Of a stretch of 64,000 nucleotides of DNA, positions 22,572 to 44,160 are shown in pieces. Location: positions 62,001-126,000 of the IMG/VR virus record IMGVR_UViG_3300022744_000022. One strand, given 5' to 3'. The translations under genes were made by a program, and so were the position numbers. The stretch's first letter is position 1, and every line of letters starts with the position of its first letter. The notes beneath the pieces are model-generated. The model did no database searches and was not told the origin of the DNA. It saw only the letters and a program-made list of their open reading frames with translations.

Positions 22572-23336
22572 ATGCGCACTGCCGTGATCCAGTTTCGCCC
22601 GCTACTCAAGGACGTACAGGGCAACCTTCATCGTTTAGCGCTGCTTGCTATGAAAGCGGCGCAGGCGAACGCAAAGTTGATTGTGCTTCCGGAGCTTGCC
22701 CTCACTGGTTACAGCTTCATGTCTGCGGCTGAGGTTGAACCCCTGGCGGAGGTCATCACAGCTTTCAAACCCGGCAGTGGGGACAGGACATCTAGTATGG
22801 GCGTCTTCCATGCTATTGCGAAGAAGTATGGTACGCATATCGCATGGGGGTTGATTGAAAAAGATGCGGGTACAGGCAAGCTTTTCAATGCCCAAGTCCT
22901 AATGTGTCCTGACGGGACCTTTGAATCGTATCGTAAAATAAATCACTTTTCTGCGGATTTCCTATGGGCTGCTGAGGGCCGTGCCAACCCTCCTATCCGT
23001 AAGATTGAAGTCGGGGGTAAAACCTACAAGGTTGGGCTTCTGATTTGCCGCGACGTTCGGGACAAGAAAGACGACTCCTGGAAGTCCTTCTATGAGAAGG
23101 GGGATGCGGATGTGGTGGTCCTGTCCGCTAACTGGGGTAAGGGCGGCTTCCCCGCAACTGCTTGGATGGATTTCGTTAAAGACAACGACACCATCTTGGC
23201 TGTAAGCAACAGGTACGGCGCAGAGATCCCTAACGACTTCGGTGAGGGTGGGGTCTGCATCATCTACCCGGACGGCACCGTGCAGTGCGACGGCCTCGTG
23301 TGGGGGCAGGACTGCATCGTCTACGGGGAAGTCTAG
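22572..23336 (+). CDS. carbon-nitrogen hydrolase (nitrilase superfamily)
   Basis: Catalytic triad motifs LPELALTG, YRKINH, LICRD. Confidence 0.85.
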   Translation: MRTAVIQFRPLLKDVQGNLHRLALLAMKAAQANAKLIVLPELALTGYSFMSAAEVEPLAEVITAFKPGSGDRTSSMGVFHAIAKKYGTHIAWGLIEKDAGTGKLFNAQVLMCPDGTFESYRKINHFSADFLWAAEGRANPPIRKIEVGGKTYKVGLLICRDVRDKKDDSWKSFYEKGDADVVVLSANWGKGGFPATAWMDFVKDNDTILAVSNRYGAEIPNDFGEGGVCIIYPDGTVQCDGLVWGQDCIVYGEV

Positions 23337-24232
23337 TGCTTTCATCCCGAGTAGCGCGCCGCTTCCAAGCCGCCTTGTCCGATCAGCTTGAGGACAAGAT
23401 GCGGGCGCTGCTGGCTAAGCCTTTGGATGCCGCTGAGGGTAAAGAGATCGCCCGGTGGTTACAGGACAACTTCTTTTTCTTGGGGACTAAGACCCCCAAG
23501 GGGCAGAAAGACCTCAAGGAGTCGATCAACAAGCTGCACTGGTTTCTTGCGCACGGAATCAGTCAGTCTGTAGATCCCGAGCGCTTGCGGGACACCATTG
23601 AGGCTGAGTGGCAGGTGGTGCAAAAGCGCCTGGGCGACCTTGCCAAATACTTCTCCGAAGAAGGCGGCAAGTCGGTCCCGAAAGAGATCAAGCAGGGCGG
23701 CAACACGTACCTGAACGTCTCAGGCTTCTACGAGGCCGACCTGATGAAGTTCGTCAAGCGTCTTGAGGCCGTGTTCGACATGCTCAAGGGTTGGCGTAAG
23801 AAAGCGTTGAGCGGGGGTGTCACGGTCGCCTTGGCGGGTCCCAAGGATTTCCGGGGTACCTCTGGGGGTAAGTACAAATCCGCCGACGACGTGCTGTACG
23901 TGCGTGCCACCCCGGATGTGTTGAAGCGCTCCAGTGGGAACTACGGAAGCTTCGAGTACATCATTGTGCATGAACTGGGCCACCGTTACGATTACAAGGT
24001 TCACCGGCCTTCTGTGGACTTTGACAAGGCTGAGTGGTGGACCAGCCGCTACAGCCGCAATGAGGGTGAGTCGTTTGCCGAGTTGTTCGCCCTCAGCAAC
24101 TTCGGGATTACGGGCCAAGGGGATCCCTTGAAACTGGACCGTTTTGAGGCGTTGATGGCAGGCCGGGATGAGCAGCCGAAGCCTGAGATCCCTGAGCACT
24201 TGAAGAAGTACCGGACACAGCCGACTTTTTGA
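23336..24232 (+). CDS. zincin-like metallopeptidase-domain protein with N-terminal RVARRF tag
   Basis: IIVHELGHRY...SRYS...ESFAELF. Confidence 0.65.
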   Translation: MLSSRVARRFQAALSDQLEDKMRALLAKPLDAAEGKEIARWLQDNFFFLGTKTPKGQKDLKESINKLHWFLAHGISQSVDPERLRDTIEAEWQVVQKRLGDLAKYFSEEGGKSVPKEIKQGGNTYLNVSGFYEADLMKFVKRLEAVFDMLKGWRKKALSGGVTVALAGPKDFRGTSGGKYKSADDVLYVRATPDVLKRSSGNYGSFEYIIVHELGHRYDYKVHRPSVDFDKAEWWTSRYSRNEGESFAELFALSNFGITGQGDPLKLDRFEALMAGRDEQPKPEIPEHLKKYRTQPTF

Positions 24233-24277
24233 GGCGTTCTGGAAAGTCCCTCTTTGCCGGTGTAGTGTACCCGGGCC

Positions 24278-25552
24278 ATGCCGAGAGAGCCCCAGGTACC
24301 CCGCTGCAACTTCTGTGGTCGTCCCCGCAATGAGGTCAAGCACCTCATTGGAGCGCCGGATGGGGCGAACATCTGCAACGGCTGTATCACCGCGACCTCT
24401 CAGGCTATCGATGAGGCTGAGCGCAAGTCCCCCGGGGCCAAGAAGGCTCAGGGCCCGCTCAAGAAGCCCAAGGAAATCACGGCGTTCGTGGACGAGCACG
24501 TGATCGGCCAGGATGCGGCCAAGCGGGAAATCGCCATCGCGGTCTACGAGCACTACCGCCGCCGGGAAGTAGACAAGAGCAAGAACGGCGTGATCATGCT
24601 CGACGGGGAAGCGGTCGAGATTGAGAAGTCCAACATCTTGCTGCTCGGGCCTTCGGGATCGGGCAAGACGCACATTGCCAGGACGATTGCCCGGTTGCTG
24701 GATGTTCCGTTCTACGTCGGGGATGCCACGAAGCTCACGAGTGCAGGCTACGTCGGGGAGGACGTGGAGTCGTTGCTTCAGGGGCTCTTGGCGGACGCTC
24801 AGAACGACATCGAGAAGGCACAGTGGGGCATCATCTTCCTGGACGAGTTTGACAAGCTGGCCCGCAAGGCTGGCTACGGGGCTTCCGGGATGCGGGATGT
24901 GACCGGCGAGGGTGTCCAGCAGGCCTTGCTCAAGCTTATTGAGGGTGGGCAGGTCGCGGTCCCCCGGGGCATGGGTTCCCGAGCGGTGTCCGGGATGATG
25001 CCTTCTGACGTGGTGGACACCCGGAACATCCTGTTCATCTGTGCCGGGTCCTTCGCAGGGATCGAGCCCGTGATCGAACGCAGGCTCAACAAGTCCACGG
25101 GCCTCGGGTTCGGCAAAGAGCACCGGAAGCAGCACGCCAAGTCCGACCTGTATCGAGAGGTCACGGTCGAGGACATTGAGGAATTCGGGTTGATTCCGGA
25201 GATCGTGGGCCGTCTGCCTGTGATCACCAGCACCTTGGAGTTGACCGAGGACGAGCTGATCCGCATCCTGACCGAGCCCAAGAATGCGATCTGCAAGCAG
25301 TTCCGGGCCTTGTTCTCGTTGGATGGGATTGACCTCCAGTTCGACCCTGAGGCATTGCGGGCGGTGGCTCAAAAGGCTCGGAAGCGGTCCACGGGTGCCC
25401 GAGCATTGCGAGCAATTCTCAAGGAAGTGCTCAAGCCTTACTCCTACGAGGCCCCGGATAACCTGGACATCTCGGCCATCCGCATTACCCCGGAGGCTGT
25501 CGAGACTCCTGGAAAGGCCCTCGTGATGCGAAAAGGCGTTGGGACGGCTTAG
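24278..25552 (+). CDS. clpX: ATP-dependent Clp protease ATP-binding subunit ClpX
   Basis: CNFC...ICNGC Zn domain, GPSGSGKT, GYVGEDVE, LDEFDK, RDVTGEGVQQALLK, LGF loop, TGARAL. Confidence 0.95.
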   Translation: MPREPQVPRCNFCGRPRNEVKHLIGAPDGANICNGCITATSQAIDEAERKSPGAKKAQGPLKKPKEITAFVDEHVIGQDAAKREIAIAVYEHYRRREVDKSKNGVIMLDGEAVEIEKSNILLLGPSGSGKTHIARTIARLLDVPFYVGDATKLTSAGYVGEDVESLLQGLLADAQNDIEKAQWGIIFLDEFDKLARKAGYGASGMRDVTGEGVQQALLKLIEGGQVAVPRGMGSRAVSGMMPSDVVDTRNILFICAGSFAGIEPVIERRLNKSTGLGFGKEHRKQHAKSDLYREVTVEDIEEFGLIPEIVGRLPVITSTLELTEDELIRILTEPKNAICKQFRALFSLDGIDLQFDPEALRAVAQKARKRSTGARALRAILKEVLKPYSYEAPDNLDISAIRITPEAVETPGKALVMRKGVGTA

Positions 25553-25576
25553 AGTTTTTGTGCTTTCTCGTAAGGC

Positions 25577-26257
25577 ATGGATGCTCTTTCGTTGCGTGTC
25601 GCCGCCCGGTTCGGGAGGATCGCTTTTGGCCAAGAAGGTAAGTTCTTGGGTCGAGACTGCCGCCTGACTTGGAGCAGGCACGGCTGGACCCTGGAAGAGC
25701 TGCCGGTCAAGGGCAAGAAAAAGTGCAAGGTGGCGGAGTTGCAGAACCCCGGGACTAGGGGTTGGGCAAACTTTGACGCTTACATCGACGGGAACATCCT
25801 GCGAGATGCGAAGCTGAGCGCTTCGGATTCGTACGAGACTATCAAGCAGAAGATGCTTGACGCTTACGAGTTGGCAGCGGAGCTGACCATCAACAAGATG
25901 ACGCCCGACGAAGCCAAGCATGCCTTGTGGCTCCGTGATCTCAAGTGGTACGAGAACGAGGTCCATTACCTCAAGATCACCCCTGAGAACACGGAACCCT
26001 TCGAGGCTGAGGGCAAGGACTACACGATCAAGGTCACGTGGACCAAGTTCTCAGTCTACTCCCCCGACTCGGACTTTCAGCAAAGTGACCCGTACTACAC
26101 GCAGTACGCGGAGTCCTCGGCCCAAGGGGCACGTAAGCTGTACCAGACTTTGAAAGCGGATCCGAACGCGCTCAAGAGCGTTCCTTGGTCCAAGCTGGGC
26201 GATTGGTTCATCAAGAACAAGATCCCCTACAAGACCAACTTCTCCCAGTGGACCTGA
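25577..26257 (+). CDS. hypothetical protein with N-terminal RVAARF tag
   Basis: MDALSLRVAARFGRIA... Confidence 0.7.
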   Translation: MDALSLRVAARFGRIAFGQEGKFLGRDCRLTWSRHGWTLEELPVKGKKKCKVAELQNPGTRGWANFDAYIDGNILRDAKLSASDSYETIKQKMLDAYELAAELTINKMTPDEAKHALWLRDLKWYENEVHYLKITPENTEPFEAEGKDYTIKVTWTKFSVYSPDSDFQQSDPYYTQYAESSAQGARKLYQTLKADPNALKSVPWSKLGDWFIKNKIPYKTNFSQWT

Positions 26258-26267
26258 GGCTAAACCG

Positions 26268-29147
26268 ATGACAAATCAAATTAGGACTGCGGGCCAGCTC
26301 AGGGCTGCTAGGTACCGCCTTCAGTGGCAAGGGGTTTTGGGCGATGGCCCTGTAACAGCTAAGCACCCAGAGCAGGAAGGTGTTTACGAAGTTACCGAGT
26401 ACGCTAATGGCGGCGCGGGGTGGCTGCTTAAAAAGAAGGCTACTGATCCCTCCGGTATTAGTGGCGGCCGTTTTCGTAGTCTAGAGTCCGCTATCAAGGA
26501 CGCTGAAGATCACGCTTTTGGAACTGGGCGTTGGCGGCACAAGACGGCTACAACAGCCGAACGAGTCCTGTCCCGCTTTGAGGAAGGCAAACCTGCCGAC
26601 CCCACGGAGAACATGAGTCCTGAGGACGCCAAGAAGTGGCGTGAGCAGACGGACGAGCACAAGGACGAGTTCAAGTCTGCGGCTGACAAGACGGCCACCA
26701 AGGTCGAGATCAAGCTACAGTACGACAGCCCTACGAGTGTCGGTAAGATCGTGTCGCCTTCGGGGCGAGCTGAATACTACTACACCCTCGGGAACGGCGC
26801 GAAGATGAGCTATTCCGACCGGGAGAAATTCCGGTACCAACTACGCAACCAAGCAAACGTGCGTGAAGCTGAGAAGTTGGTGAAGGAATTGGATCAGAAG
26901 GTGCCGTCCAAGACGGCCGCTGCAAAGAAGCCCTCGCGTCCCTCGGTTGAGGAAACCCCTGAGGAAAAGCGTTTCACGCAGGAACGTGAGAAGGTCGAGA
27001 AGGCGCTTGAGGACTTGCGGGAAGAGATCGCGGATCGCTTCCCTATCCCAGAGGATCGTCGGCATCCGCCGGAAGCACGCGAAGTCCTCAACCACTACCT
27101 TCTTGCGGATCGCCTGCAACACAAGGCGTTCATGCAGTCCGTGGGTGGTAACTCGGACGAGCCCTCAGTTCTCCGAGAAATGTTTGGGCTCTTGGCCAAG
27201 TCGGAAGCAGAGATCAAGAAGGCCAAGCGCTTGCTGGCTGAGGCGGCTGCTATGGAAAAGCGGAAGTCTGCTTCATCGGTTAGTGTGTTGACCCGCTTCC
27301 TGACAGCGGATCAGGACAAAGCGGCCCCCGAGCAGGTGGACAAGTATTTCAAGCAGGTCAAGAAGGACAACCCGTCCTACAGTGACTCGCAGGCCTACGC
27401 GACCGCGTGGTCCATCTACTGCAAGCACAAGAATCCTGGCTCGGAGTCGTGCCACCAGGACGAGTACCTGACGGGCAAGACGGCCGCTTGGAAGGCTCCC
27501 GCGATCAATCAGGCTCTCGCCAAGTTGATCGCCAAGAAGGTAGACCGCCATTTCGTCACGGACCTCTTGAACGAAAAGCTGTCGGGGCGTAGCTGGGAAG
27601 CCAAGCTGAAAGAGGCCATTGGGAAAGCCGTGGCCCCCACGCAAATGCGTGATCAGGTTGAAGCACAGCCCGCGATCAAGAAGTGGCTGGCGGACCTTTC
27701 GGATTCGGAGCTTTCCAAGATCCGTGACTTGCTAGAGGAAACCCTCAACCACGGCAAGAGTGAGCAGTACAAGGCCAAGCCCGACGCTTGGAAGACGGCC
27801 TCAAGCCCTCAAGAGCTGCATGAGATGCGCAAGATGTTGGAGCGTTCCGGGTACGACCCCGATGACGCCCAGGTCTTGCAAGAAGAGGGTATGGGCCCCG
27901 ATGAGCTGGCGGAGCGTCTTCGGGTTCGCCCCGGGGCCCCCGGCAGCCTTGGCTACTCGCACCGGCTCAAGTTGATGCTGGAGAAGAAGGCGCTGCAAGC
28001 CATCGCGTGGATGGAGCGCAACGGCTATCGTGAGGACCCCCTGCTGCGTGAGCTGCAACAGCAGCTTCGGCGCGGGACGCCGAGTGCCCTGGCAGGTGCC
28101 CAAGAGATCTTGGAATCCGCGATCGAGGCGTACGACATCCCGATCAAGTTGGCCTCGGATGTGACGGCGGCTCGTAAGCCCAAGAGCATCGCCGAGAAGA
28201 AGGACCTTCAACTGCTCATCGATCAGTTGAAGCGCAACCCGAAGGACGGGGACGCAGAGCGTGCTCTGCGTGGGGATTGGGAGTACCGAGACGCGGACAT
28301 CGCGAAGGTCAAGGCGCAGACCAAGACAGCGGGTGCTGGGGAGGACATGATCCCGCAGATCATTCAAGATCTATCCCGGATTCATGGCTTGGGTGCGGTC
28401 GAGGTCAACGATTTCTCCCGCCCCGGCGCATCTACAGTAGATTTTTCGGTGTTCGCTGATCTCAAAGTCACGGCTTCGGGGAGTGTTCAAACACGGCGTA
28501 ACGGACCTTACGAGAAGAAACCGTTGGAGTTTCAGGCTGATCTACGCAGTGTCAAAAACACGATCTTAAGTCTGTTGAAGAAGCACCGAGCATACGACGT
28601 GATGGTGGTGATGCCTCTGCGTAAGAATTCAGCGCAAGATCGCCTTTCTGAGCCGGGGCCAAAGTTTTATGACGATTCGATCGTGCGAATTTCATTTTCA
28701 CTCGCTTTACAAGCAAAGACCGCTGGGCACAGCTATGCCGTAGATAGCATGTCGGTCTTGTTCGTTGAGGGCCGTCGCATGACCCCGTTCAACCGCGACA
28801 CGATTGACGATATCAACCACACTTCGATCGAGGTTGTGGCTGACGATGGGGAGCTGCACGAGGCTAACCTGAAGTTTCTAGGCTACCAGTCTTCTGGGAT
28901 TTTGACGCGCATTGATGAGCAGAACGGTCTACGTCGTGAGACTCGCGTGGATGTCCAGTACCCGGTAGACGAGGGTGGGTCGTCCCAGACTTCGGCACGT
29001 ACGGCACTCTCGGCTTTGGTCCGCCTGGGTAAGAAACTCGACTTCCTCGTAGAGCCCGTAGCCCGTGGGTACCAACCCCAGCACCGTCAAACCAGCTTCG
29101 TAGCCAAACCGAAGGGACCTAAGAGCCCCTTCGGTAGGTTCCGGTGA
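26268..29147 (+). CDS. modular polyprotein-like protein with repeated KTA junctions
   Basis: 959 aa; seven KTA motifs separate short unrelated segments. Confidence 0.75.
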   Translation: MTNQIRTAGQLRAARYRLQWQGVLGDGPVTAKHPEQEGVYEVTEYANGGAGWLLKKKATDPSGISGGRFRSLESAIKDAEDHAFGTGRWRHKTATTAERVLSRFEEGKPADPTENMSPEDAKKWREQTDEHKDEFKSAADKTATKVEIKLQYDSPTSVGKIVSPSGRAEYYYTLGNGAKMSYSDREKFRYQLRNQANVREAEKLVKELDQKVPSKTAAAKKPSRPSVEETPEEKRFTQEREKVEKALEDLREEIADRFPIPEDRRHPPEAREVLNHYLLADRLQHKAFMQSVGGNSDEPSVLREMFGLLAKSEAEIKKAKRLLAEAAAMEKRKSASSVSVLTRFLTADQDKAAPEQVDKYFKQVKKDNPSYSDSQAYATAWSIYCKHKNPGSESCHQDEYLTGKTAAWKAPAINQALAKLIAKKVDRHFVTDLLNEKLSGRSWEAKLKEAIGKAVAPTQMRDQVEAQPAIKKWLADLSDSELSKIRDLLEETLNHGKSEQYKAKPDAWKTASSPQELHEMRKMLERSGYDPDDAQVLQEEGMGPDELAERLRVRPGAPGSLGYSHRLKLMLEKKALQAIAWMERNGYREDPLLRELQQQLRRGTPSALAGAQEILESAIEAYDIPIKLASDVTAARKPKSIAEKKDLQLLIDQLKRNPKDGDAERALRGDWEYRDADIAKVKAQTKTAGAGEDMIPQIIQDLSRIHGLGAVEVNDFSRPGASTVDFSVFADLKVTASGSVQTRRNGPYEKKPLEFQADLRSVKNTILSLLKKHRAYDVMVVMPLRKNSAQDRLSEPGPKFYDDSIVRISFSLALQAKTAGHSYAVDSMSVLFVEGRRMTPFNRDTIDDINHTSIEVVADDGELHEANLKFLGYQSSGILTRIDEQNGLRRETRVDVQYPVDEGGSSQTSARTALSALVRLGKKLDFLVEPVARGYQPQHRQTSFVAKPKGPKSPFGRFR

Positions 29148-29204
29148 AGGCAAACTGCGTTTTTTCTAGCCCAAAGTCTTGGCCAAATGGTGTAGTCTGC
29201 GTTC

Positions 29205-30295: not shown

Positions 30296-30321
30296 GCTTC
30301 CGCTACAGGTGAGGTGTCCCG

Positions 30322-30714: not shown

Positions 30715-30742
30715 TTGATTGCGCACTGAGGTGCGACGCTCC

Positions 30743-31322: not shown

Positions 31323-31348
31323 CGTAATGTTTTCGATAGTTTACGCTA

Positions 31349-31553: not shown

Positions 31554-31559
31554 AAAACT

Positions 31560-32378
31560 ATGCAAATCGAATTGAACAAGCTTCGTACGGCTGTGACGGC
31601 CAACCTGAGCAAGACCCAGAAGGCCAAGCAGGCTGCTGAGGCTGCCTTCCTGAAGGCCAAGGCGGCGTACGATGCTGCTCACGCTGAGCATGCCAAGGCG
31701 ACGGAGGACCACGCGAAGATCGCGCAGCTTTTCCCCGTCGAGACCGCTGCGAAGGTCAAGAGCAAGCCGGGTCCCAAGGCCAAGGTGAAGGCGGCTGCTG
31801 TGGCGGCGGCCCCCAAGGGCAAGCCGGGTCCCAAGGCGAAGGCGAAGCCGGGTCCCAAGGCGAAGGCGGCCCCCAAGGCAGTGGCAGCCCCGAAGGCGAA
31901 GGCGGCCCCCAAGGCAAAGACGGGCCCGAAGAAGACCCGCAAGAAGGCCGACGGCAGCATGACCATGGTCGAGCGCCTCGTGGCCGTGATCGGCAACAAG
32001 ATCCTGACCGCTGGTGAGATGGCTCAAGGCCTCATCGCCGCCGGTAACCCCCCGACCAGCAAGAACCTGCCCGCGTACATCAGCTCGGTGCTGTCGAGCA
32101 CGGTGGACGAACAGGGCAACAAGGTCTTCGAGGCCGTGGAGCGCGGTAAGTATTGCGTGGCTGCCAACCGCAAGACCGCAACGGCAACGACCAAGACGGC
32201 AGCGGCCCCGAAGGCTGCTCCGAAGGCCGCTGCTCCGAAGGCCGTGGCGGCTGCTGTCGCTGCCCCGACCCCAGCTCCGGAGGCCGCATCCGACGGCCAG
32301 AGCCCGGCGGACAAGCTCTTGGCGGATATGGGCCTGGGCGATCAGTTCGGCGGTTCCGCTGCGGCTCCGCTGTCCTGA
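31560..32378 (+). CDS. histone H1-like Lys/Ala/Pro-rich protein with winged-helix domain
   Basis: KPGPKAK and AAPKA repeats; VERLVAVI...YISSVLSS...FEAVERGKY wHTH-like segment; strong codon bias; GAGGAG SD. Confidence 0.75.
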   Translation: MQIELNKLRTAVTANLSKTQKAKQAAEAAFLKAKAAYDAAHAEHAKATEDHAKIAQLFPVETAAKVKSKPGPKAKVKAAAVAAAPKGKPGPKAKAKPGPKAKAAPKAVAAPKAKAAPKAKTGPKKTRKKADGSMTMVERLVAVIGNKILTAGEMAQGLIAAGNPPTSKNLPAYISSVLSSTVDEQGNKVFEAVERGKYCVAANRKTATATTKTAAAPKAAPKAAAPKAVAAAVAAPTPAPEAASDGQSPADKLLADMGLGDQFGGSAAAPLS

Positions 32379-35191: not shown

Positions 35192-35201
35192 CGACACCGA
35201 C

Positions 35202-35486
35202 TCAGGGCCGTCGGTACGTGGGTGGATTTTCTCGTAGGAAGCGGTCTACGATCCGCTGACTCATTCGGTCCGCGATGGTCTGCTCGATGTGCCGCTGCCG
35301 GGCCTTTTCGCTCGTGAAGGCGAGATGCCACAGGGGTTTGTCCCCCTTCTTGGCGAACACGATGGCGTAAGGTCGGCCCCCGGCCTCGTACTCCCAGACC
35401 AGCAGGTCAGAGCCCTTGGGCGTGTAGGGCTTCATGCCCCGCGTCTTGGGCGGCAGGTAACTCCGGTCGAGGCTCAGCACGTTCAC
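35202..35486 (-). CDS. hypothetical protein with C-terminal RIVDRF tag
   Basis: Lone minus-strand ORF; ...MSQRIVDRFLREN. Confidence 0.6.
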   Translation of the reverse strand: MNVLSLDRSYLPPKTRGMKPYTPKGSDLLVWEYEAGGRPYAIVFAKKGDKPLWHLAFTSEKARQRHIEQTIADRMSQRIVDRFLRENPPTYRRP

Positions 35487-35532
35487 ATCCTACCGTGGTA
35501 CAAATAGTCTCGCCGATGGTGTACTAAGGTAG

Positions 35533-36835: not shown

Positions 36836-36866
36836 ACAGGGCCGGGAGAATCCCGGCCCTGTTTAG
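36832..36866. terminator. bidirectional terminator-like hairpin
   Basis: Perfect 16-bp inverted repeat CTAAACAGGGCCGGGA-GAA-TCCCGGCCCTGTTTAG between convergent genes. Confidence 0.75.
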
Positions 36867-36876
36867 CACAACACTC

Positions 36877-37629: not shown

Positions 37630-37686
37630 AGTTGCCCCTCCTTAAGGGGTAGCTGAGCGCCCGAGGTTTCGAGTCGAGGACGCTTT

Positions 37687-37722
37687 GAAAGAGGGGCTGG
37701 CTTGATCGCCAGCCCCTCTTTC
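37687..37722. terminator. 15-bp hairpin in the leader of the 36877-37629 gene
   Basis: GAAAGAGGGGCTGGC-TTGATC-GCCAGCCCCTCTTTC. Confidence 0.6.
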
Positions 37723-37766
37723 GCTTTTCTAGCTACGTAGATCCGGCACCGCAACCAAATAAAGGA

Positions 37767-37802
37767 TCGTGGCTATCGAATTCTGATTTCGTGGCTGTCG
37801 AA
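37767..37802. repeat. 14-bp direct repeat pair, 22-bp period
   Basis: TCGTGGCTATCGAA (37767) and TCGTGGCTGTCGAA (37789). Confidence 0.65.
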
Positions 37803-38033
37803 CTGCGCGGCGGATACTTCGCTTATACTGGATCTAGCCTGGAAACTCTTTTAGAACCAAGGACTTAGGCATCACTGGTGGGGCCAGCCGCACGATAAGG
37901 GCACTCGGATGCTCTCCCGGTGCGAAGGGTTGCGCGATAGGGCGCACTTACCTCGACGGTCCACAGGGCTTCACGATGCATCATGAAGTTTCCAATGCCA
38001 TTCGGCGTTCGTTCGCTGGTGTAGGCGTGCAGA

Positions 38034-38222
38034 ATGCCGTCTGACCTTGACTGTCCCCGCTGCCATCACCCGATGACCCAGCACTACGTGGGTGAGGGGT
38101 GAGGTGACAAGTGCTGGGAGCGTGATCACCCGCATGACAGCGGGCGCTGCGGGTGTCGGTACAAGCCCCCTGAAAAACCGAGTCCCGTGAGGGACCTGTG
38201 GGATCACCTGCTCAAAGACTAA
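38034..38222 (+). pseudogene. Cys/His Zn-binding mini-gene with internal in-frame TGA
   Basis: GGTGTA 10 nt upstream; MPSDLDCPRCHHPMTQHYVGEG*GDKCWE...RCGCRY...LWDHLLKD; TGA at 38100-38102. Confidence 0.55.
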
Positions 38223-38250
38223 CTGTTTTGTGCGGCCCGTAAGTAAACCC

Positions 38251-38763
38251 ATGTACGCCTACCGCCGGACAGCAGCAACGCGACCCTCGCAACCGGAGTT
38301 GACCGCGTTGCTTGAGAAAGCCGTCGATGTTCACTCTCAGTTACAGAGGTGGATCGATCGTTTTCCCGCCATCCTGAAAGAGGCGCGGAAAGAAGCCCAA
38401 GACCTCCCTGAGGGTCTTGTGTGGCAGGACCGTTTTGTCCCGTACTGGAGCGAACTAGACGCCTGGGAAAAAGAGCTGTCGGAACTCTCGTACCAGGCTG
38501 AGGGTCTAGAGTACCCCAAGGGTTCCGCCAACGTGGCGTTACGCCGGACGATTGAGAACACCCTTAGCAAGCACTCTACCCCCGATAAGGCCAGGCTTAC
38601 GTATGCCATCGATAGGGTGCATTTCGAGTTCTCCACGAAGCTGAACCGAAAAGACCACATTGCCTACGAGATCTCTCGCTTGGAGACATGGGCCAGGGCC
38701 TTTGAAGCGTGGACCCACGAAGCCAAACGCACTCTCCTGGCCTCAATCAAGTTCACTCGTTAG
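38251..38763 (+). CDS. hypothetical protein with N-terminal YRRTA motif
   Basis: MYAYRRTAA... Confidence 0.6.
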   Translation: MYAYRRTAATRPSQPELTALLEKAVDVHSQLQRWIDRFPAILKEARKEAQDLPEGLVWQDRFVPYWSELDAWEKELSELSYQAEGLEYPKGSANVALRRTIENTLSKHSTPDKARLTYAIDRVHFEFSTKLNRKDHIAYEISRLETWARAFEAWTHEAKRTLLASIKFTR

Positions 38764-38788
38764 CTCCGAGTTGGTGTAGCCGCCTTTC

Positions 38789-39772
38789 ATGGCGCTACCC
38801 CTCGAAAAACTCCTGGCAGTCAAAATCATCATCTCGCATCAGAACTGTGCTGATGGCACGGCGGCTGCGATGTTCCTGCACGACGTTCTCCCTGACGCCC
38901 AGATCCGGTTCTTGCAGTATGGGACCGAAGCGTATCGGACGTTGCAGGCGGAGCCCGGAATGCTCTTTCTGGACTTCTCGCCTTCCCCCGAGACATACCA
39001 GCAGTTCATCGCCCAGGGGGCGCTCATCCTGGACCACCACAAGGGTGCTCAAGCCATCGTAGAGGCGTTCGGGGAGTCCGGGGTATTCGGAGATGAGGTC
39101 AAGGACCCGGGGGTCTGCGGGGCCTTCCTGGCGTACCGTGAGGCCTGGTTTAGGCTCAAGCACACGGACGGCAAGCCCGGGCCCTCTCCGGAAGAAGCAG
39201 GGTTTGGCGGCCAGATTGCTCGTTTGGCTGGGATCCGGGATACCTGGCAGCGCCAGGACCCCACGTGGGACGAGGCTTGCGTGCTCGCTGAGGCGATGCG
39301 GTTTTACCCTGCCGAGTCCTGGCTGATTGACCGACCATTTGCCCCGGAGAATCGAGCTTGGTGGGACGCTCGCCTGGCTACCGGCCGTATCTTGGTTGAG
39401 CGCAACGTCAGGTCCGTGAAGAAGGCAGTTGATGGGGCGTACCGCTTCACGACTTCGCGAGGCACCCGTGTCTGCCTGTTTTCGGGGGTCCCATTGTCGA
39501 GCGACGCCGCCGAGTTGGTGGACCATGATGCGGACCTTGTGGTCGGGTTCGACTACTACGCGATGGAGCAGGGTGTGGCACCCTTGGTCTTCTCAACCCG
39601 CTCCCACACAACCTTCAACTGCCTGGAATTCTGCAAAGCGCACGGCGGGGGCGGCCACACCAAAGCGGCAGGCTTCTCGGTCAAGTTCGATCCGAAGGTG
39701 GGGGCACAGGATCCCTACTCGGTGTTCGAGGGCTTGTTGGAACGCTACGAAGCGTCGGTTCAACCGGGCTGA
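38789..39772 (+). CDS. DHH/DHHA1 phosphoesterase (oligoribonuclease NrnB-like)
   Basis: SHQNCADG, FLDFS, LDHH, STRS, GGGGHTKAAG. Confidence 0.85.
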   Translation: MALPLEKLLAVKIIISHQNCADGTAAAMFLHDVLPDAQIRFLQYGTEAYRTLQAEPGMLFLDFSPSPETYQQFIAQGALILDHHKGAQAIVEAFGESGVFGDEVKDPGVCGAFLAYREAWFRLKHTDGKPGPSPEEAGFGGQIARLAGIRDTWQRQDPTWDEACVLAEAMRFYPAESWLIDRPFAPENRAWWDARLATGRILVERNVRSVKKAVDGAYRFTTSRGTRVCLFSGVPLSSDAAELVDHDADLVVGFDYYAMEQGVAPLVFSTRSHTTFNCLEFCKAHGGGGHTKAAGFSVKFDPKVGAQDPYSVFEGLLERYEASVQPG

Positions 39773-39830
39773 TAATTCATGCGTGACGGGGGTTTAACGA
39801 ACCGCTCACTCTGAGCGCCGTGGAGCCCCT

Positions 39831-40796
39831 TTGGACCAAGCCCTGCACTCTGAGCGTGTAGCTCACCGCTTCCTGATCGCCTCGTTCAAGCCGGGCGACT
39901 ACATCTTGTTCGGCAAGTTCCGGAACAAGCGTGGGCGCGTGGTCCGCATCTTCAACGATGAGCGGGACATCCCGTACATCGAGATTCAGCCGGTGCCCAA
40001 GGGCCGCAAGAAGAACAGGATTTTTGGGCTCTACACGATCCGCCAGATGACCCCTGAGGCCATCCAGGAAGCGCAGCAGTTGGAGGCGGCGGAACGGGCT
40101 CTCGTCCACAAGGTGGCGGCCCGTTACCTGGAAGCCACTCAGATGCCGCCTGGGTGGGTTGAGCACAAAGGGTCTGCGGGGCGTTCCTTTTGGATCAGCC
40201 CCGACGGTAAGGCGGAGATCAGCGACACGGGTCGTAAAGGCAGCCCGCAGCGCTTCCAGGTCTTCTTTCTTCAGGACGGGAAACGGCACGAGGACATCGG
40301 CTGGCCGTCCCTCAAGAAGGCGCTCCAGTACCTGAGTGGCGAAGTGGGGTTGAGTGCCCACCCAATGGCCAAGCGGGAGGGCGGCAACCTGGAGAACTTC
40401 CTGGACGGCTTCGCACGACGGCACTCTAGGCTTGGGCGGCTTCTCCCTAAGGTCGTGGAGAAAGCTCAAGGATCCAGCTCGGGGCACGGAGAAGCTCGCC
40501 AACACGGTAACGAGATCTGGCTGTTCCCGAAGTTCTGGGACCTCGATCTCAAGACCCAAGATTTCGTACTGGCTCACGAGATCGGGCACTATGCGTTGAG
40601 TCGGAAACCCGGCACCTGGTTGATGGACCTCGGGAAAGAGCTGGGCGTTGACGTGTGGGACACGGGCAGCCTACCCTTCGGACAGTTCAATCAAGACGAG
40701 GCGTTCGCGGATTCCTTTGCTAGTTACTTCTTAGAGCCGGGTGAACTGCGGAGACGCTACCCTGCTTGGGTTACTTTCGTTGAGGCCGTCCTGTGA
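39831..40796 (+). CDS. multi-module protein: KOW-like, unknown and zincin HExxH modules, two RVAxRF-type tags
   Basis: RVAHRFLIA, FKPGDYILFGKFRNKRGRV, KVAARYLEA, LAHEIGH...EAFADSFA. Confidence 0.7.
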   Translation: MDQALHSERVAHRFLIASFKPGDYILFGKFRNKRGRVVRIFNDERDIPYIEIQPVPKGRKKNRIFGLYTIRQMTPEAIQEAQQLEAAERALVHKVAARYLEATQMPPGWVEHKGSAGRSFWISPDGKAEISDTGRKGSPQRFQVFFLQDGKRHEDIGWPSLKKALQYLSGEVGLSAHPMAKREGGNLENFLDGFARRHSRLGRLLPKVVEKAQGSSSGHGEARQHGNEIWLFPKFWDLDLKTQDFVLAHEIGHYALSRKPGTWLMDLGKELGVDVWDTGSLPFGQFNQDEAFADSFASYFLEPGELRRRYPAWVTFVEAVL

Positions 40797-43700
40797 ACAC
40801 CATGCAAACACGATTGGTCGAACGCTTCACACGGGTAGGGGCCTACTCCGAGGACACCCTAGAGATTGTTGCGGCCGGTCTTGCTCTACTGATCGCGCAG
40901 AACTACATCGTCACCAACCCCTTCTTCGATGAGAAGGAGATCCGAAACTACCTGCTGTTGCGCAAGCAGTTTCACGGGGACTTCGTTCAAGCGTGCCTGG
41001 ACTTGGCAGACGCCTTTGAAGAGGGGCAGTTCGGTCAGGCGGTTCTACCCGCTGTCCCAGCCTTGCGGGCCATCGGGCATCTCGGGGTCAAGCAGGATCA
41101 GCAAGCAATCCGCCAACTCGCAAGAGCGTTCCGAGGGCTCAAGCACCTCAAGTACCGGGATGTCGAAAACCCGAAGCTCATGCGTCTCATCATGATGGCG
41201 CGTAAACTTGATGTCACCACCGGGGCAGATGGTAGGGACATCAAGGACTTCTTGGAGAATCTTGTTAAGATCCAGGCGGTGCCGACAAGACTCCGGACCC
41301 TTCTTCGCAAAGTCATCAAGTTGCCCGTCCCGGGCAGGACGCTCACCGAGAATGCCGATCCAGGCGCTTGGTTCGAGATGCCCGAGGACAAGAAACAAAG
41401 CCTTCGCGAGCTGACCGAGAAGGTTGAGCAAGAGCAGCTTGGGATCTGGGAGAAGTACAAAGACGCCAGTGACGATGAGCGGATGGCGGCTTACCAGAGT
41501 GCTGCCCGTCGCCTACAGAAGATTCAGAGCATCGCAGGCGTGAACCTGGGTGTTATCAAGCGTGACGATGAGGTCCCGCTTGACACGCTTTTGAAGAAGG
41601 AAACGCGACTCGAATCCGACGGACCGACGGAGTACACACGACTCAAAATTGAGGACTACCTCAAAAAGACAGGGGCGTACCGCTTCCAGCGCAAGGAAGG
41701 TGATCCGCTACCTCGTGAGGTCAGCAAGCTGCTCACATTGTTGCGCAAGGCCAAGACCTTCTCGACAATGCAGCGCGTGATCAAGGATGCTGTGGATCGT
41801 CAGGTGTTGGGCAGGGCGTCCACCGAAGATGTCGATCACATCATCACGCAAGCGAACAAGAACCGGGCGTTGAAAGAGGGGAAACCTCTCACGCCTCTAC
41901 AGTTCGAGCCTAAGAGCGTAGAGCAGTTTCAGGTGGACCACGATACGGGCCCCGTGGCGTTCGACCCTGAGTACACGGATGACGAAAAGAAGCAGTTGCT
42001 GGGTCGTGTCTCCCGTGCTTTGAGTGATCTAGAGAGTGTCTACGGAAAAGGCTTCTGTGGTAAGCATGCCAAGAAGCTCGCGTTCCGTTTCAACAAGGGG
42101 TACAGCGGGACCGCTTCCGCTCACTACTTCGTTTGGGATGACCGTCGGACGTGGCAACCCAGGGTAACGTTTGGTCCGGAGTTCGAGGGCCTCTTGGCTC
42201 ACGAACTCTCGCACTACCTGGAAGACTTGCTGGCGTACCAGATTCAGAAGCAGGACGAACCAGAGCGCATCGAGGCCCTCCTGGGTAAAGGGATCGAGGG
42301 AGGACCAGGCGTCCTGTTCTCCAACACGGGGGTGTCCCTGAGGCTCTTCGCTGAGGGTGGTGCCCTGGAGAGTTACCGAGGACACCTAAGTAAGTCGGTC
42401 CCGGAGTTCGTTGAGTTCATCGACGCCGTGCTTGCAACCCCGGACTACAAGCGCTGGGAGGACAAGCTTGGATCAGCGTACGACACCGCACTGCCCATGG
42501 CCATCAAGGCGCTGACAGGGATGAGCTACTACGACTTGCCCAAAGAGCACCCGTACTACGGTTTGATCGACAAGGCGCAATACCGCTCGGACCTGCCCCC
42601 GGAAGTGAACGACGAGACTCAGAAGCAGTTCAAGAACCTGATGGATGGGGATGGGCGCAAGCTCAACTACTACAACAGCTCCACCGAGGTCTGGGCCCGG
42701 ATGTGCGAGCAGTACGTGTACAACCGGCTGATCGATGCGGGGATCTCGAACCCCTGGCTCACACAGATGAACTACGAGGAAGATGTCTTCATGAACGAGA
42801 AGACCTTCGATACGCAGTTACGTCCGATTATGGACAAGATCTTCGCCAAGCTGAAAGGCCGCAAACTCATTGCCAGTGTGCCCATGAGCCCCTTGCGTGA
42901 ACGTCTGGCAGACCGCTTCTTGCTCATCAATCGGGTAGCTGCTCGTTACAAAGAGAAGAAGCAGGTAAAGTCGGAGGACGGCGGCAAGACTACCGTCTAC
43001 GTCTACTCTGAGCGGCAGATCGCCAATCGGAACAAGGCGAAGGCTGAGCGAGTCCAAAAGCTCAGCGGCGCTATCAAGAAGCTGAGGGCCAAGGTCAAGA
43101 AGGACTTGGGGTCCAAGGATCCTGAGACGGCTCGTACAGCACTCGCGGTGGCCCTCATGGATCATACCTATGAGCGAGTTGGCAACGAGAGTTCTGCCAA
43201 GGACGGGCACTTCGGGGTCACGGGGTGGCAGCGTAAGCACGTGAGCTTCGGCAAGGACGGGGCGTTCATCAAGTACGTGGGCAAGTCCGGGGTCAAGCAC
43301 GAGAAGAAGGTCACGGACTCGGCGATCCGTAGTGCGTTGAAGGCTGCTTACGACTCCCTGGAAGGTGATGACACGGGCGTTCTGGAGTGGGACGGGGGCA
43401 AGGTCACGGCCGAGAAGGTGAACCAGTACCTGGAGCCCTTTGACGTTACGGCCAAGGACATCCGTGGCTTCCACGCCAACGACCAGATGCGGGTCAACCT
43501 CAAGAGCGTGCGCTCGAAGGGCGGCTCGCTTCCTGAGGACAAGAAGAAGCGTGAGGACAAGCTCAAGAAGGAGTTCGCGGAAGCTCTTGAAGCGACCGCA
43601 GAGTGCGTGGGGCACGAGGCCGCTACACTCAAGAATCAGTACCTTGTCCCCGGCCTAGAGGACTCGTTTCTCAAGGATGGGACGGTCATCGACAAGCTCG

Positions 43701-43906
43701 GGAGCCAACACGAAGACGAGATCCCCGGCGGCTTGGCGGACAAGAAAAAGCCAAGCGACTTTGACCCCAAGCAACTCGCCAAGGGAATCAAGGTCGAGCT
43801 GGAGCACACCGATGATCGAAATCTCGCGCAAGAGATCTCGATGGATCACTTGACCGAAGATCCGGATTACTACAGCAAGCTTGAGAAGATGGAGTCGGAA
43901 AAATGA
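40793..43906 (+). CDS. large polyvalent protein: HExxH/LPD1-like, type IB DNA topoisomerase and DUF5661-like domains
   Basis: HELSH; STEVWARMCEQYV; RVGNE, YVGKSG, TAKDIR, VGH...NQY; GIKVELEHT...DHLTEDPDYYSKL. Confidence 0.85.
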   Translation: MNTMQTRLVERFTRVGAYSEDTLEIVAAGLALLIAQNYIVTNPFFDEKEIRNYLLLRKQFHGDFVQACLDLADAFEEGQFGQAVLPAVPALRAIGHLGVKQDQQAIRQLARAFRGLKHLKYRDVENPKLMRLIMMARKLDVTTGADGRDIKDFLENLVKIQAVPTRLRTLLRKVIKLPVPGRTLTENADPGAWFEMPEDKKQSLRELTEKVEQEQLGIWEKYKDASDDERMAAYQSAARRLQKIQSIAGVNLGVIKRDDEVPLDTLLKKETRLESDGPTEYTRLKIEDYLKKTGAYRFQRKEGDPLPREVSKLLTLLRKAKTFSTMQRVIKDAVDRQVLGRASTEDVDHIITQANKNRALKEGKPLTPLQFEPKSVEQFQVDHDTGPVAFDPEYTDDEKKQLLGRVSRALSDLESVYGKGFCGKHAKKLAFRFNKGYSGTASAHYFVWDDRRTWQPRVTFGPEFEGLLAHELSHYLEDLLAYQIQKQDEPERIEALLGKGIEGGPGVLFSNTGVSLRLFAEGGALESYRGHLSKSVPEFVEFIDAVLATPDYKRWEDKLGSAYDTALPMAIKALTGMSYYDLPKEHPYYGLIDKAQYRSDLPPEVNDETQKQFKNLMDGDGRKLNYYNSSTEVWARMCEQYVYNRLIDAGISNPWLTQMNYEEDVFMNEKTFDTQLRPIMDKIFAKLKGRKLIASVPMSPLRERLADRFLLINRVAARYKEKKQVKSEDGGKTTVYVYSERQIANRNKAKAERVQKLSGAIKKLRAKVKKDLGSKDPETARTALAVALMDHTYERVGNESSAKDGHFGVTGWQRKHVSFGKDGAFIKYVGKSGVKHEKKVTDSAIRSALKAAYDSLEGDDTGVLEWDGGKVTAEKVNQYLEPFDVTAKDIRGFHANDQMRVNLKSVRSKGGSLPEDKKKREDKLKKEFAEALEATAECVGHEAATLKNQYLVPGLEDSFLKDGTVIDKLGSQHEDEIPGGLADKKKPSDFDPKQLAKGIKVELEHTDDRNLAQEISMDHLTEDPDYYSKLEKMESEK

Positions 43907-44160
43907 GCTACGATCGTCGCACAGCCAGCTTATTCGATCAGAAGCTGGCTCGCGCTGTCTCTAGGGCTAAAGCTCATTGGGGGTCGGGCTGGGCGAACCT
44001 CACACCCAACATGCAAAACGCTTATGTTTGTCAAGGCGTGGTTGCGGAGCTTGGTTCCATGGATTGGGATCACCTGGACTCCGCTGATCCTGAGGTCCAG
44101 AAGGTCGTAGATCGGCTGAAAGCAATTTCTGAGTTGTGTTTGGATGCGACTCGAAGTTGA
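43903..44160 (+). CDS. hypothetical protein with N-terminal YDRRTA motif
   Basis: MSYDRRTASLF... Confidence 0.6.
   Translation: MSYDRRTASLFDQKLARAVSRAKAHWGSGWANLTPNMQNAYVCQGVVAELGSMDWDHLDSADPEVQKVVDRLKAISELCLDATRS

What the first reader, a model, noticed from the sequence alone, without database searches (positions are those of the whole stretch)
23336..44160. Shared peptide code on unrelated proteins: R-[VIL]-[AV]-x-R-[FY] tag plus [KR]TA junctions (candidate capsid-loading and maturation system)
Seen: otherwise unrelated ORFs carry the same short basic amphipathic motif at termini or domain boundaries: RVARRFQAA (23336), RVAARFGRIA (25577), RVLSRF and VLTRFLTA (26268 ORF), RIVDRF (35202-35486, C-terminal), RVAHRFLIA and KVAARYLEA (39831), RLVERF, RLADRF and RVAARY (40793 ORF, the last directly before the topoisomerase domain). 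A second motif, [KR]TA followed mostly by a small residue, opens 26268 (IRTAG), 38251 (YRRTAA) and 43903 (YDRRTAS). I did not notice the tag in the replication or metabolic enzymes. Established: T4 internal proteins use a short N-terminal capsid-targeting sequence, and T4 and phiKZ prohead proteases cut head proteins at short Glu-ending motifs. Inference: this is an analogous but different system, with a packaging tag and an Ala-P1 cleavage site marking cargo (zincins, TopoIB, unknown modules) injected with the DNA.
Basis: partly seen in the sequence, partly recalled or inferred. Interest (0 to 1): 0.88.

Follow-up and report, generated by a model that had tools for sequence, protein, structure and literature searches.

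The report
Shared leader and cleavage motifs on phage cargo
An uncultured huge phage marks a set of unrelated accessory proteins with the same short helix and a Lys/Arg-Thr-Ala junction that, in its relatives, also sits on the capsid protein and its scaffold-like neighbour, so the junction is most likely where the head-maturation protease cuts and the marked proteins are most likely capsid cargo.

Summary
R-[VIL]-[AV]-x-R-[FY] occurs 7 times in 78 window proteins against 0.18 expected. All seven lie between 23.3 and 43.9 kb. Four are within 10 residues of an N-terminus, and orthologues keep them. The 959-aa protein at 26268 has eight [KR]TA[AGST] sites (0.24 expected) and reads as beads on a string, with modules that are split and fused differently in relatives.

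The main new evidence is comparative. In 81 head-gene loci of this uncultured huge-phage clade, [KR]TA[AGS] sits about 20 residues into the major capsid protein (53 of 54). It is also 40-fold enriched in the scaffold-like protein next to the maturation protease (120 observed, 2.7 expected), and absent from portal and other head proteins. A syntenic relative of the window carries that capsid protein.

I read KTA as the prohead-protease site (about 0.7). I read the helix as a prohead-docking leader (about 0.45, inferred only). The tagged zincins, TopoIB polyvalent protein and polyprotein would then be capsid cargo. No cleavage or packaging has been shown, and the window phage's own head genes were not located. 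This is a new variant of the T4 and phiKZ/SPN3US principle.

The parts
23336..24232 (+). Zincin-like protein (HELGH at 23969-23983) with an N-terminal tag RVARRF at 23348-23365. The start is probably GTG 23336, overlapping the stop of the preceding gene.
   Evidence: No Pfam or PHROG hit.
24278..25552 (+). Phage ClpX with a zinc-finger N-domain. It has no tag. It is context for the tagged genes and a candidate partner in a rival reading.
   Evidence: Pfam zf-C4_ClpX, AAA_2 and ClpB_D2-small. Its position next to tagged genes is conserved in relatives.
25577..26257 (+). 226-aa protein of unknown fold. Its N-terminal leader carries the tag RVAARF (25595-25612), followed by ...RIA just before the globular core.
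   Evidence: AlphaFold gives residues 3-17 as a helix with pLDDT below 50 and a confident core from about residue 21. No PDB fold match.
26268..29147 (+). 959-aa beads-on-a-string polyprotein. [KR]TA[AGST] starts at nt 26283, 26541, 26688, 26910, 27477, 27792, 28323 and 28716. The conserved ~40-aa spacer element lies at 26556-26690 and starts with RVLSRF (26562-26579). A tag-like VLTRFLTA lies at about 27285-27308, before a small Cys module.
   Evidence: Its modules are found separately or in other combinations in L002, P0002, P0018, P0033 and head-module proteins.
35202..35486 (-). 94-aa protein with a C-terminal RIVDRF (35238-35255). It is homologous to the first domain of a 207-240-aa family that is encoded just downstream of the capsid gene in relatives and carries N-terminal tags there.
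38251..38763 (+). 170-aa protein (177-aa ORF from GTG 38230) with the short N-terminal leader M-Y-A-Y-R-R-T-A-A (RTAA at 38266-38277).
   Evidence: The same leader type (Y-x-Y-D-R-(R)-T-A-S) replaces the helix tag in some homologues of the 25577 protein.
39831..40796 (+). Zincin (HEIGH at 40575-40589). It has an N-terminal tag RVAHRF (39855-39872) before a small beta domain, and a second tag KVAARY (40110-40127) at the next module boundary.
   Evidence: Orthologues in L002 and L003 keep the tags while the modules are split or fused differently.
40793..43906 (+). Polyvalent protein of 1037 aa. In order: N-terminal tag RLVERF (40811-40828), zincin HELSH (42200-42214), LPD1 (~42656-42856), tandem tags RLADRF (42902-42919) and RVAARY (42932-42949), topoisomerase IB (~43022-43636), DUF5661 (~43769-43897).
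   Evidence: Pfam, tags. TopoIB stands alone with the tag at its own N-terminus in two relatives.
43903..44160 (+). 85-aa protein with the N-terminal leader M-S-Y-D-R-R-T-A-S (RTAS at 43918-43929).

Best explanation
The window is the replication and accessory region of an uncultured huge phage, represented by 208-kb and 291-kb contigs. A subset of its accessory proteins carries a two-part peptide code that belongs to the head-assembly machinery of its clade.

**Part 1: the cleavage site.** [KR]-T-A followed by a small residue is the recognition and cleavage site of the clade's head-maturation protease, cutting most likely after the Ala. The protease would do three things:
- trim about 20 residues from the major capsid protein;
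- cut the scaffold-like core protein at 2-4 sites;
- cut cargo polyproteins such as the 26268 protein into separate modules, and remove short N-terminal leaders.

**Part 2: the docking helix.** The basic amphipathic helix ...L-[AS]-x-R-V-A-x-R-[FY]-L-x-A would dock a protein or module to the acidic interior of the prohead (scaffold core, capsid inner face or protease). The protein is then enclosed during assembly. The helix is often bracketed by Ala-ending sites and would then be clipped off.

**The cargo.** It comprises three zincins, a topoisomerase IB with LPD1 and DUF5661 (a polyvalent protein), the 25577 family and the polyprotein modules. It would travel in the capsid and enter the host with the DNA.

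**What is shown:**
- the motifs, their non-random distribution and their conservation;
- their location at N-termini and module junctions;
- their presence on capsid, scaffold-like and head-module proteins of relatives.

**What is inferred:** the cleavage itself, the cutting position, the docking, the packaging and the injection.
For: **In the window**
1. Both motifs are far above chance and vary at synonymous codon positions.
2. Homologues of the 25577 protein (41 proteins, 34-88% identity) nearly all begin with the helix. It is sometimes in tandem. An Ala-ending tripeptide (KTA, RTA, xIA, LxA) follows directly before the conserved core. Some homologues have the Y-x-Y-D-R-R-T-A-S leader instead. 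AlphaFold places the leader as a low-confidence helix detached from a confident core.

**KTA as a module junction**
3. KTA marks junctions between modules that occur separately or in other orders elsewhere.
4. When a junction decays to KSA, a fresh KTA follows within 2-5 residues in several copies.
5. In 141 independent cluster representatives, [KR]TA[AGS] is 219 observed against 18.7 expected.

**In head modules of relatives**
6. A KTA polyprotein lies in a head module together with a head maturation protease (phrog_18299, E 9e-14) and a major head protein (phrog_2522, E 2e-53).
7. Across 81 head loci, the capsid protein has [KR]TA[AGS] in its first 45 residues in 53 of 54 copies.
8. The Q/D/E-rich protein between protease and capsid gene has 120 sites against 2.7 expected. 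One site is conserved in 57 of 58 copies, although the family averages only 49% identity.
9. Portal and six other families have none. The protease has 5 against 3.1 expected.
10. The strict tag is 42 observed against 2.9 expected in head loci. About half of these are near the N-terminus of the large protein encoded between portal and protease, and C-terminal parts of some members share modules with window 26268.

**Link to the window phage**
11. Contig IMGVR_UViG_3300033489_000001 is syntenic with the window (AAA 69%, ClpX 68%, the 25577 homologue 58%, TopoIB 57%). It carries the KTA-type capsid protein, a scaffold-like protein with four sites, and the protease.
12. In a 448-kb phage from the same sample, tagged proteins, including a stand-alone tagged TopoIB, lie 2-6 kb upstream of portal-protease-scaffold-capsid.

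**Against zincin processing**
13. KTA polyproteins lack zincin motifs (4 of 164, which is the chance level), so cutting by a zincin in the same chain is unlikely.

**Precedent**
14. T4 and SPN3US use propeptides and a shared protease motif on head and ejected proteins (PMC10052503). Polyvalent proteins are predicted to be packaged and injected (PMC5512222).
Against: - No protein-level data exist. The clade is uncultured.
- The nearest cultured phages with a related capsid protein are Tunturi_5 (46% identity) and phage G (39%). Neither has the tag. Tunturi_5 is not clearly enriched in KTA, and only the head region of phage G was inspected.
- The capsid family is 86-97% identical throughout. Conservation of KTA there says little by itself, and in Tunturi_5 the same position reads K-S-A, so it could be structural.
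- The protease class is unknown: the AlphaFold model is poor and there is no Pfam or PDB match.
- The 'scaffold' identity of the Q/D/E-rich protein rests on position and composition only.
- The window phage's own head genes were not found in contig positions 5-126 kb.
- The tagged genes of the window sit among replication and metabolism genes, not late genes.
- The tag is rare in KTA polyproteins outside this subclade (3 observed, 1 expected), so it cannot be a general requirement for loading.
- TopoIB has no Ala-ending site after its tag.
Confidence: 0.55

Rival explanations
1. Linker grammar without processing. KTA and the helix are helix-capping or hinge elements that travel with modules as they are shuffled. 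They are kept because they give well-behaved domain boundaries or mediate oligomerisation. Nothing is cut or targeted.
For: - The helix shows a regular small and hydrophobic stripe (positions -3, -2, 1, 2, 5, 6, 8), typical of a packing helix.
- Thr followed by Ala is a common helix N-cap.
- The capsid KTA aligns with K-S-A in Tunturi_5, which suggests a structural role.
- No cleavage has been shown.
Against: - A mere linker does not explain why stand-alone proteins keep 5-20-residue leaders ending in KTA.
- It does not explain why a decayed site is replaced by a new one a few residues on.
- It does not explain why enrichment is confined to capsid, scaffold-like and cargo-like proteins and is absent from portal, tail and replication proteins.
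Confidence: 0.15
2. Cytoplasmic polyprotein processing unrelated to the capsid. KTA is cut by a phage zincin acting in trans, or by a host protease, to release accessory enzymes inside the infected cell. The helix is a recognition element for that protease.
For: - Three zincins are encoded among the tagged genes.
- Zincins of polyvalent proteins have been proposed to process them (PMC5512222).
- The window genes are far from any head gene.
Against: - KTA polyproteins almost never contain a zincin (4 of 164, the chance level).
- Only 5 of 81 head loci have a zincin-like ORF nearby.
- The same motif sits on the capsid protein and is 40-fold enriched in the scaffold-like protein beside the head protease.
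- The zincins themselves carry the tag, as substrates would.
Confidence: 0.12
3. The helix is a recognition or adaptor peptide for the phage ClpX, or for another chaperone. It marks proteins for unfolding, timed turnover or remodelling rather than for packaging. KTA may still be the head-protease site.
For: - A ClpX with its substrate- and adaptor-binding zinc-finger domain is encoded between tagged genes, and this neighbourhood is conserved in all four relatives examined.
- ClpX is known to read short N-terminal and C-terminal peptides. I recall a resemblance of L-R-V-[AV] to the ClpX-binding tail of the adaptor SspB. This rests on my own knowledge and was not tested.
- Tandem duplication of the tag suits an avidity-type binding motif.
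- A review suggests that jumbo-phage ClpX proteins may translocate unfolded proteins or aid virion assembly (PMC7824862).
Against: - The whole region is syntenic, so adjacency is not specific evidence.
- The tag also occurs in head-module proteins, far from ClpX.
- No test of binding was possible with these tools.
Confidence: 0.12
4. Chance, or a compositional artefact of Arg/Ala-rich proteins in a GC-rich genome.
For: The motif was defined after looking at the data. Arg, Ala and Val are common at 59% GC.
Against: - Composition-preserving shuffles give 0.18 against 7 observed, 2.9 against 42 and 18.7 against 219.
- The position at N-termini and junctions is conserved in orthologues at 45-80% identity.
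- The motifs are also present in a relative with 48% GC (L002).
Confidence: 0.01

Closest known systems
Phage T4 capsid targeting sequence of internal proteins, with the gp21 prohead protease
   Same: Unrelated proteins share a short N-terminal leader. The leader ends at a protease motif that is also used on the major capsid and scaffold proteins. The cargo is injected with the DNA. (PMC10052503 cites these roles. The rest is established knowledge.)
   Different: - Here the site ends in Ala after Lys/Arg-Thr, not in Glu.
- The leader is a basic amphipathic helix with a different sequence.
- Sites also lie between many modules of one chain.
- The protease cannot be assigned to the gp21 family.
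phiKZ-like giant phages (phiKZ gp175, SPN3US gp245) and their ejection proteins
   Same: A head protease cuts a three-residue motif on many head and ejected proteins. Propeptides can carry several sites and are cut into fragments. Some propeptides are only 20-24 residues long (PMC10052503).
   Different: - Their motif has Glu at P1.
- No shared helix tag has been described.
- The phages are unrelated. The capsid protein here is a 292-aa HK97-type protein, closest to Tunturi_5 and phage G.
Polyvalent proteins of phages and conjugative elements (Iyer et al. 2017, PMC5512222)
   Same: The 40793 protein combines a zincin, LPD1, TopoIB and DUF5661 in one chain. Such proteins are predicted to be packaged and delivered with the DNA.
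   Different: That work proposes processing by the protein's own zincin and, in the passages read, describes no shared junction peptide or leader. Here the junction motif is shared with capsid and scaffold-like proteins, and most KTA polyproteins have no zincin.
Phage P1 Dar antirestriction proteins
   Same: Large multidomain effectors are loaded into the head and injected, and some are proteolytically processed first (PMC5512222; PMC9024508 was listed but not read).
   Different: I know of no common linear motif for P1. Loading there depends on an ordered set of partner proteins (my own knowledge).
Staphylococcal phage 80alpha capsid and scaffold proteins cut by the host protease Prp; herpesvirus assemblin sites with Ala at P1
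   Same: In 80alpha, a short N-terminal peptide ending in a conserved motif is removed from both capsid and scaffold proteins. Assemblin cuts after Ala before a small residue. Both statements rest on my own knowledge and were not tested here.
   Different: The sequence motifs are different. The 80alpha protease is a host enzyme. No fold-level relationship of this clade's protease to assemblin could be shown.

Membership tests
T4-type capsid-targeting plus prohead-protease maturation system (functional class) | One short motif shared by the major capsid protein, the scaffold or core protein, and internal or cargo proteins | tested here: met
   At sequence level only. [KR]TA[AGS] is in the capsid N-terminus in 53 of 54 copies. 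The scaffold-like protein has 120 sites against 2.7 expected. Polyproteins have 219 against 18.7.
T4-type capsid-targeting plus prohead-protease maturation system (functional class) | N-terminal leader on otherwise unrelated cargo proteins, ending at the protease motif | tested here: met
   There are helix or Y-x-Y-D-R-R-T-A leaders on unrelated window proteins and their orthologues. The leader is detached from the core in the model.
T4-type capsid-targeting plus prohead-protease maturation system (functional class) | Cleavage after Glu (the T4 and phiKZ type of motif) | tested here: not met
   The conserved junction is Lys/Arg-Thr-Ala followed by Ala, Gly or Ser.
T4-type capsid-targeting plus prohead-protease maturation system (functional class) | Protease of the gp21 / assemblin-like family | tested here: inconclusive
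   There is only a PHROG match to 'head maturation protease' (phrog_18299, E 1e-12 to 1e-14). No Pfam or PDB match was found. The AlphaFold model is too poor for a fold search.
T4-type capsid-targeting plus prohead-protease maturation system (functional class) | Tagged proteins are present in virions in cleaved form | not testable with these tools
   The clade is uncultured. No proteomics were reported for the nearest isolate (PMC11924767).
Polyvalent proteins (Iyer et al. 2017) | Several effector or LPD domains in one polypeptide of a portal- and terminase-type phage | tested here: met
   The 40793 protein has LPD1, Topoisom_I and DUF5661, plus a HExxH zincin. Relatives encode portal, protease and an HK97-type capsid protein.
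Polyvalent proteins (Iyer et al. 2017) | Delivery into the host together with the DNA | not testable with these tools
   This is a prediction in the literature. There are no data for this phage.
ClpX recognition or adaptor peptides | Peptide binds the ClpX N-domain or pore and confers ClpX dependence | not tested
   Only gene neighbourhood is available. The tools do not predict complexes.
Twin-arginine (Tat) signal peptides | Consecutive Arg-Arg followed by a hydrophobic stretch and a signal-peptidase site | tested here: not met
   In the tag the two Arg are four residues apart. The tag is followed by polar sequence or directly by the globular core.

The most novel reading that the evidence does not exclude
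The helix is read by the phage's own ClpX, which would act as a loading motor rather than a degradation machine. ClpX would unfold tagged cargo and beads-on-a-string polyproteins and feed them into the assembling prohead. The head protease would then cut them at KTA into modules that refold inside. This would be an ATP-driven protein-packaging pathway, which no phage is known to have. The evidence neither supports it beyond conserved gene neighbourhood nor excludes it.
Probability: 0.07. Interest if true: 0.9.

Novelty: new variant of a known kind. Interest (0 to 1): 0.62.

Why it matters
- **Reading cargo from sequence.** If the reading is right, the motifs let one read from sequence alone which proteins a very large, wholly uncultured clade of huge phages carries in its capsid and injects. 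The capsid family has more than 2000 protein clusters on contigs of up to 620 kb. The spacer-bearing polyproteins fall in 481 clusters.
- **How multidomain cargo is made.** It points to a mechanism: a chain of modules separated by protease sites.
- **Connecting two literatures.** It links the predicted 'polyvalent protein' effectors to a concrete loading and processing signal.
- **A possible tool.** It offers a compact tag-plus-site pair for loading foreign proteins into capsids, as the T4 targeting sequence has been used.
- **Testability.** The proposal can be tested with recombinant proteins, without culturing the phage.

Tried and rejected
**Searches that found nothing useful**
- No near or protein-level relative of the window among deposited phages, apart from generic DNA polymerase hits.
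- I walked 57 kb upstream of the window with exact-protein look-ups and found only tail and baseplate genes.
- A 26,037-bp contig that seemed to link a close relative to a capsid gene was a coincidence of contig length.
- The head protease has no Pfam or PDB match, even with a profile. Its AlphaFold model (mean pLDDT 54) is too poor for a fold search, so none was run.
- The 25577 domain has no PDB fold match.

**Explanations considered and rejected**
- A DNA-level repeat or recombination site: rejected, because codons differ between copies.
- A Tat signal: rejected on anatomy.
- Self-processing by a zincin in the same chain: rejected for KTA, because polyproteins lack zincins.

**Candidate laboratory model**
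- Tunturi_5 was examined and rejected. It has no tags and only weak KTA enrichment in 173 of 309 kb.


Full report
**What the window is.** The 64-kb window is positions 62,001-126,000 of IMGVR_UViG_3300022744_000022, a 208-kb contig. The same genome is also assembled as a 291-kb ENA contig. The window encodes:
- an SNF2 helicase;
- an intein-bearing DnaB;
- a primase and a family A DNA polymerase;
- an AAA ATPase, ThyX and a C-N hydrolase;
- ClpX, a DHH phosphoesterase and a Dam methylase;
- RNase HII and a dNMP kinase.

Pfam (all long window ORFs) and PHROGs (ten ORFs of the 23-44 kb region) identified no structural gene in the window. No deposited phage is a close relative. Upstream of the window lie about 57 kb of giant tail and baseplate genes.

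**Check of the observation.**

*The tag.*
- The strict tag R[VIL][AV].R[FY] occurs 7 times in 78 predicted proteins. Residue shuffles give 0.18, and none of 2000 reaches the observed number.
- All seven hits lie between 23,348 and 42,949.
- With the first gene's start placed at GTG 23336, four copies start at residues 5-9 of their proteins.
- The other three are a C-terminal copy in the 94-aa protein at 35202-35486 and a tandem pair between LPD1 and the topoisomerase IB domain of the 1037-aa polyvalent protein.
- About 18,000 residues of tail proteins have none.

*The junction motif.*
- [KR]TA[AGST] occurs 13 times against 3.4 expected.
- Eight copies are in the 959-aa protein at 26268, where 0.24 is expected.
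- Codons differ between copies of both motifs, so the peptide is what is conserved.

**Anatomy of the leader.** Forty-one homologues of the 25577 protein (34-88% identity) almost all start with Met, a few variable residues and the helix. In five the helix is duplicated in tandem. An Ala-ending tripeptide follows, directly before the conserved core. A few homologues instead have the short leader Y-x-Y-D-R-(R)-T-A-S, which also opens window genes 38251 and 43903.

Over 63 distinct copies the consensus extends to L-[AS]-x-R-V-A-x-R-[FY]-[LQ]-x-A. In one L002 protein the unit reads Met-KTA, helix, KTA-Gly, and then the module begins. AlphaFold with a 33-sequence alignment gives a confident globular core from residue ~21. 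Residues 3-17 form a helix of low confidence that is not packed on the core.

**KTA marks module boundaries.** Pieces of the 26268 protein recur in other arrangements:
- In L002, residues 93-147 are fused in front of the 25577 homologue, and residues 817-949 form a separate ORF.
- Other proteins fuse the Cys module or the C-terminal module to the 25577 family.
- Homologous polyproteins carry up to 11 sites.

A ~40-aa element (window 26556-26690) recurs two to five times per protein. It is found in 481 cluster representatives out of 1.84 billion. It ends in Phe-Lys-x-Ala. In the 141 representatives analysed, [KR]TA[AGS] is 219 observed against 18.7 expected, but the strict helix tag is only 3 against 1. 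So KTA is general in these proteins, and the helix belongs to a subclade.

**Link to head assembly.** One KTA polyprotein (P0057) lies in a head module that contains:
- a head maturation protease (phrog_18299);
- a Q/D/E-rich 447-aa protein;
- a major head protein (phrog_2522) whose N-terminus is an amphipathic stretch ending in Y-I-K-T-A, followed by A-G.

That capsid family has more than 2000 members. The 120 best matches to the query are 86-97% identical to it, and the family sits on contigs of up to 620 kb. Eighty further head loci were fetched. The gene order there is portal, a ~1100-aa protein, a ~240-aa protein, protease, the scaffold-like protein, a ~210-aa protein, and the capsid protein.

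Counts of [KR]TA[AGS] against shuffles:

| Protein family | Observed | Expected | Note |
|---|---|---|---|
| Scaffold-like | 120 | 2.7 | One site conserved in 57 of 58 copies, at 49% mean identity |
| Capsid | 54 | 2.5 | Within the first 45 residues in 53 of 54 copies |
| Polyprotein family 17 | 13 | 1.8 | |
| Polyprotein family 15 | 8 | 1.0 | |
| Portal | 0 | 0.9 | |
| Six other families | 0 | | |
| Protease | 5 | 3.1 | |

The strict helix tag is 42 observed against 2.9 expected in these loci. About half of these are near the N-terminus of the large protein between portal and protease. The C-terminal parts of some members of that family share modules with window 26268.

**Link to the window's own lineage.** The window phage's head genes were not found. 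Two relatives stand in for them:
- IMGVR_UViG_3300033489_000001 (412 kb) is collinear with the window from the AAA ATPase to TopoIB, at 53-72% identity for most shared proteins (37-50% for three). It has the orthologous polyprotein and N-terminal tags on five proteins. It carries the KTA-type capsid protein, a scaffold-like protein with four sites, and the protease.
- In a 448-kb phage from the same sample, a tagged small protein and a stand-alone TopoIB that begins with the tag lie 2-6 kb upstream of the portal-to-capsid block.

**Interpretation.** A motif found on the capsid N-terminus, on the scaffold-like protein and at cargo junctions, and absent elsewhere, is the signature of prohead-protease substrates in T4 and in phiKZ-like phages (PMC10052503). 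I therefore read KTA as that protease's site, with probability about 0.7.

I read the helix as a docking leader for the acidic prohead interior, with probability about 0.45. It could instead be an extended recognition element of the same protease. Cargo status of the window proteins fits the polyvalent-protein concept (PMC5512222). All of this is inference from sequence.

**Rivals.**
- *A zincin in the same chain.* This is unlikely for KTA. Only 4 of 164 polyproteins contain HExxH, which is the chance level.
- *ClpX.* It is encoded among the tagged genes in every relative examined, but the whole region is syntenic, and tags also occur in head modules. A ClpX-recognition role for the helix remains open.
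- *A pure linker.* This does not explain leaders on stand-alone proteins, or the restriction of the motifs to head-associated proteins.

**Limits.**
- There are no proteomics for any member of the clade.
- The protease class is unknown.
- The scaffold assignment rests on position and composition.
- The capsid family is too uniform for its KTA to count as independent conservation. At 46% identity, Tunturi_5 has K-S-A at that position and no tag system.

Noticed in passing
window 26556-26690 (aa 97-141 of the 26268 protein): A ~40-aa element recurs 2-5 times per protein between other modules. Its core F-E-E-G-K-P-A-D-P-T...M-S-P-E-D-A..W is almost invariant, and it ends in F-K-x-A. It is found in 481 cluster representatives of 1.84 billion, and no Pfam family covers it. 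Such strong conservation suggests a fixed binding partner.
   Followed up: partly
L012:11514-12980 and L010:4965-5468 (contig positions ~33.3 kb and ~39.8 kb, upstream of the window): Two proteins in the tail/baseplate region begin with Y-T-Y-R-R-A-A-A-S and S-T-Y-T-Y-K-R-A-G. These resemble the Y-x-Y-D-R-R-T-A-S leader of window genes 38251 and 43903. Their meaning is unknown.
   Followed up: no
window 31560-32378 (+): A 272-aa protein has a coiled-coil N-terminus and long Ala/Lys/Pro repeats like a linker histone. A small globular domain follows, and then two KTA sites 7 residues apart. It may be a DNA-condensing head protein.
   Followed up: no
window 7165-9936 (+); L211:7655-9976: DnaB carries an intein with a LAGLIDADG endonuclease. 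In a close relative the ClpX gene carries an intein instead (773 aa, Hom_end_hint), whereas the window's ClpX is intact.
   Followed up: no
L016-L095 head loci: The 292-aa HK97-type capsid protein is extremely uniform: the 120 best matches are 86-97% identical to the query, on contigs of 200-620 kb from many environments. The adjacent scaffold-like protein averages only 49% identity.
   Followed up: partly
window 25577-26257 (+): The globular domain of this family is modelled with high confidence (pLDDT 86) but has no Foldseek match in the PDB (best E 0.1). It may be a new fold.
   Followed up: partly
window 53968-54216 (-): An 82-aa protein carries S-L-L-A-R-Y-I-L-T at residues 13-21.
   Followed up: no
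window 2218-2661 (+) and L008:7051-7521: There are two copies of an S-adenosylmethionine decarboxylase-like gene (PF02675) about 11 kb apart. One sits among the tail-fibre genes.
   Followed up: no
JGI contig position 1 / ENA contig k141_631761 position ~291,219: The two independent assemblies end within a few bases of each other on the tail-gene side. This suggests a real genome end or a repeat. The ENA contig extends ~83 kb further on the other side.
   Followed up: no
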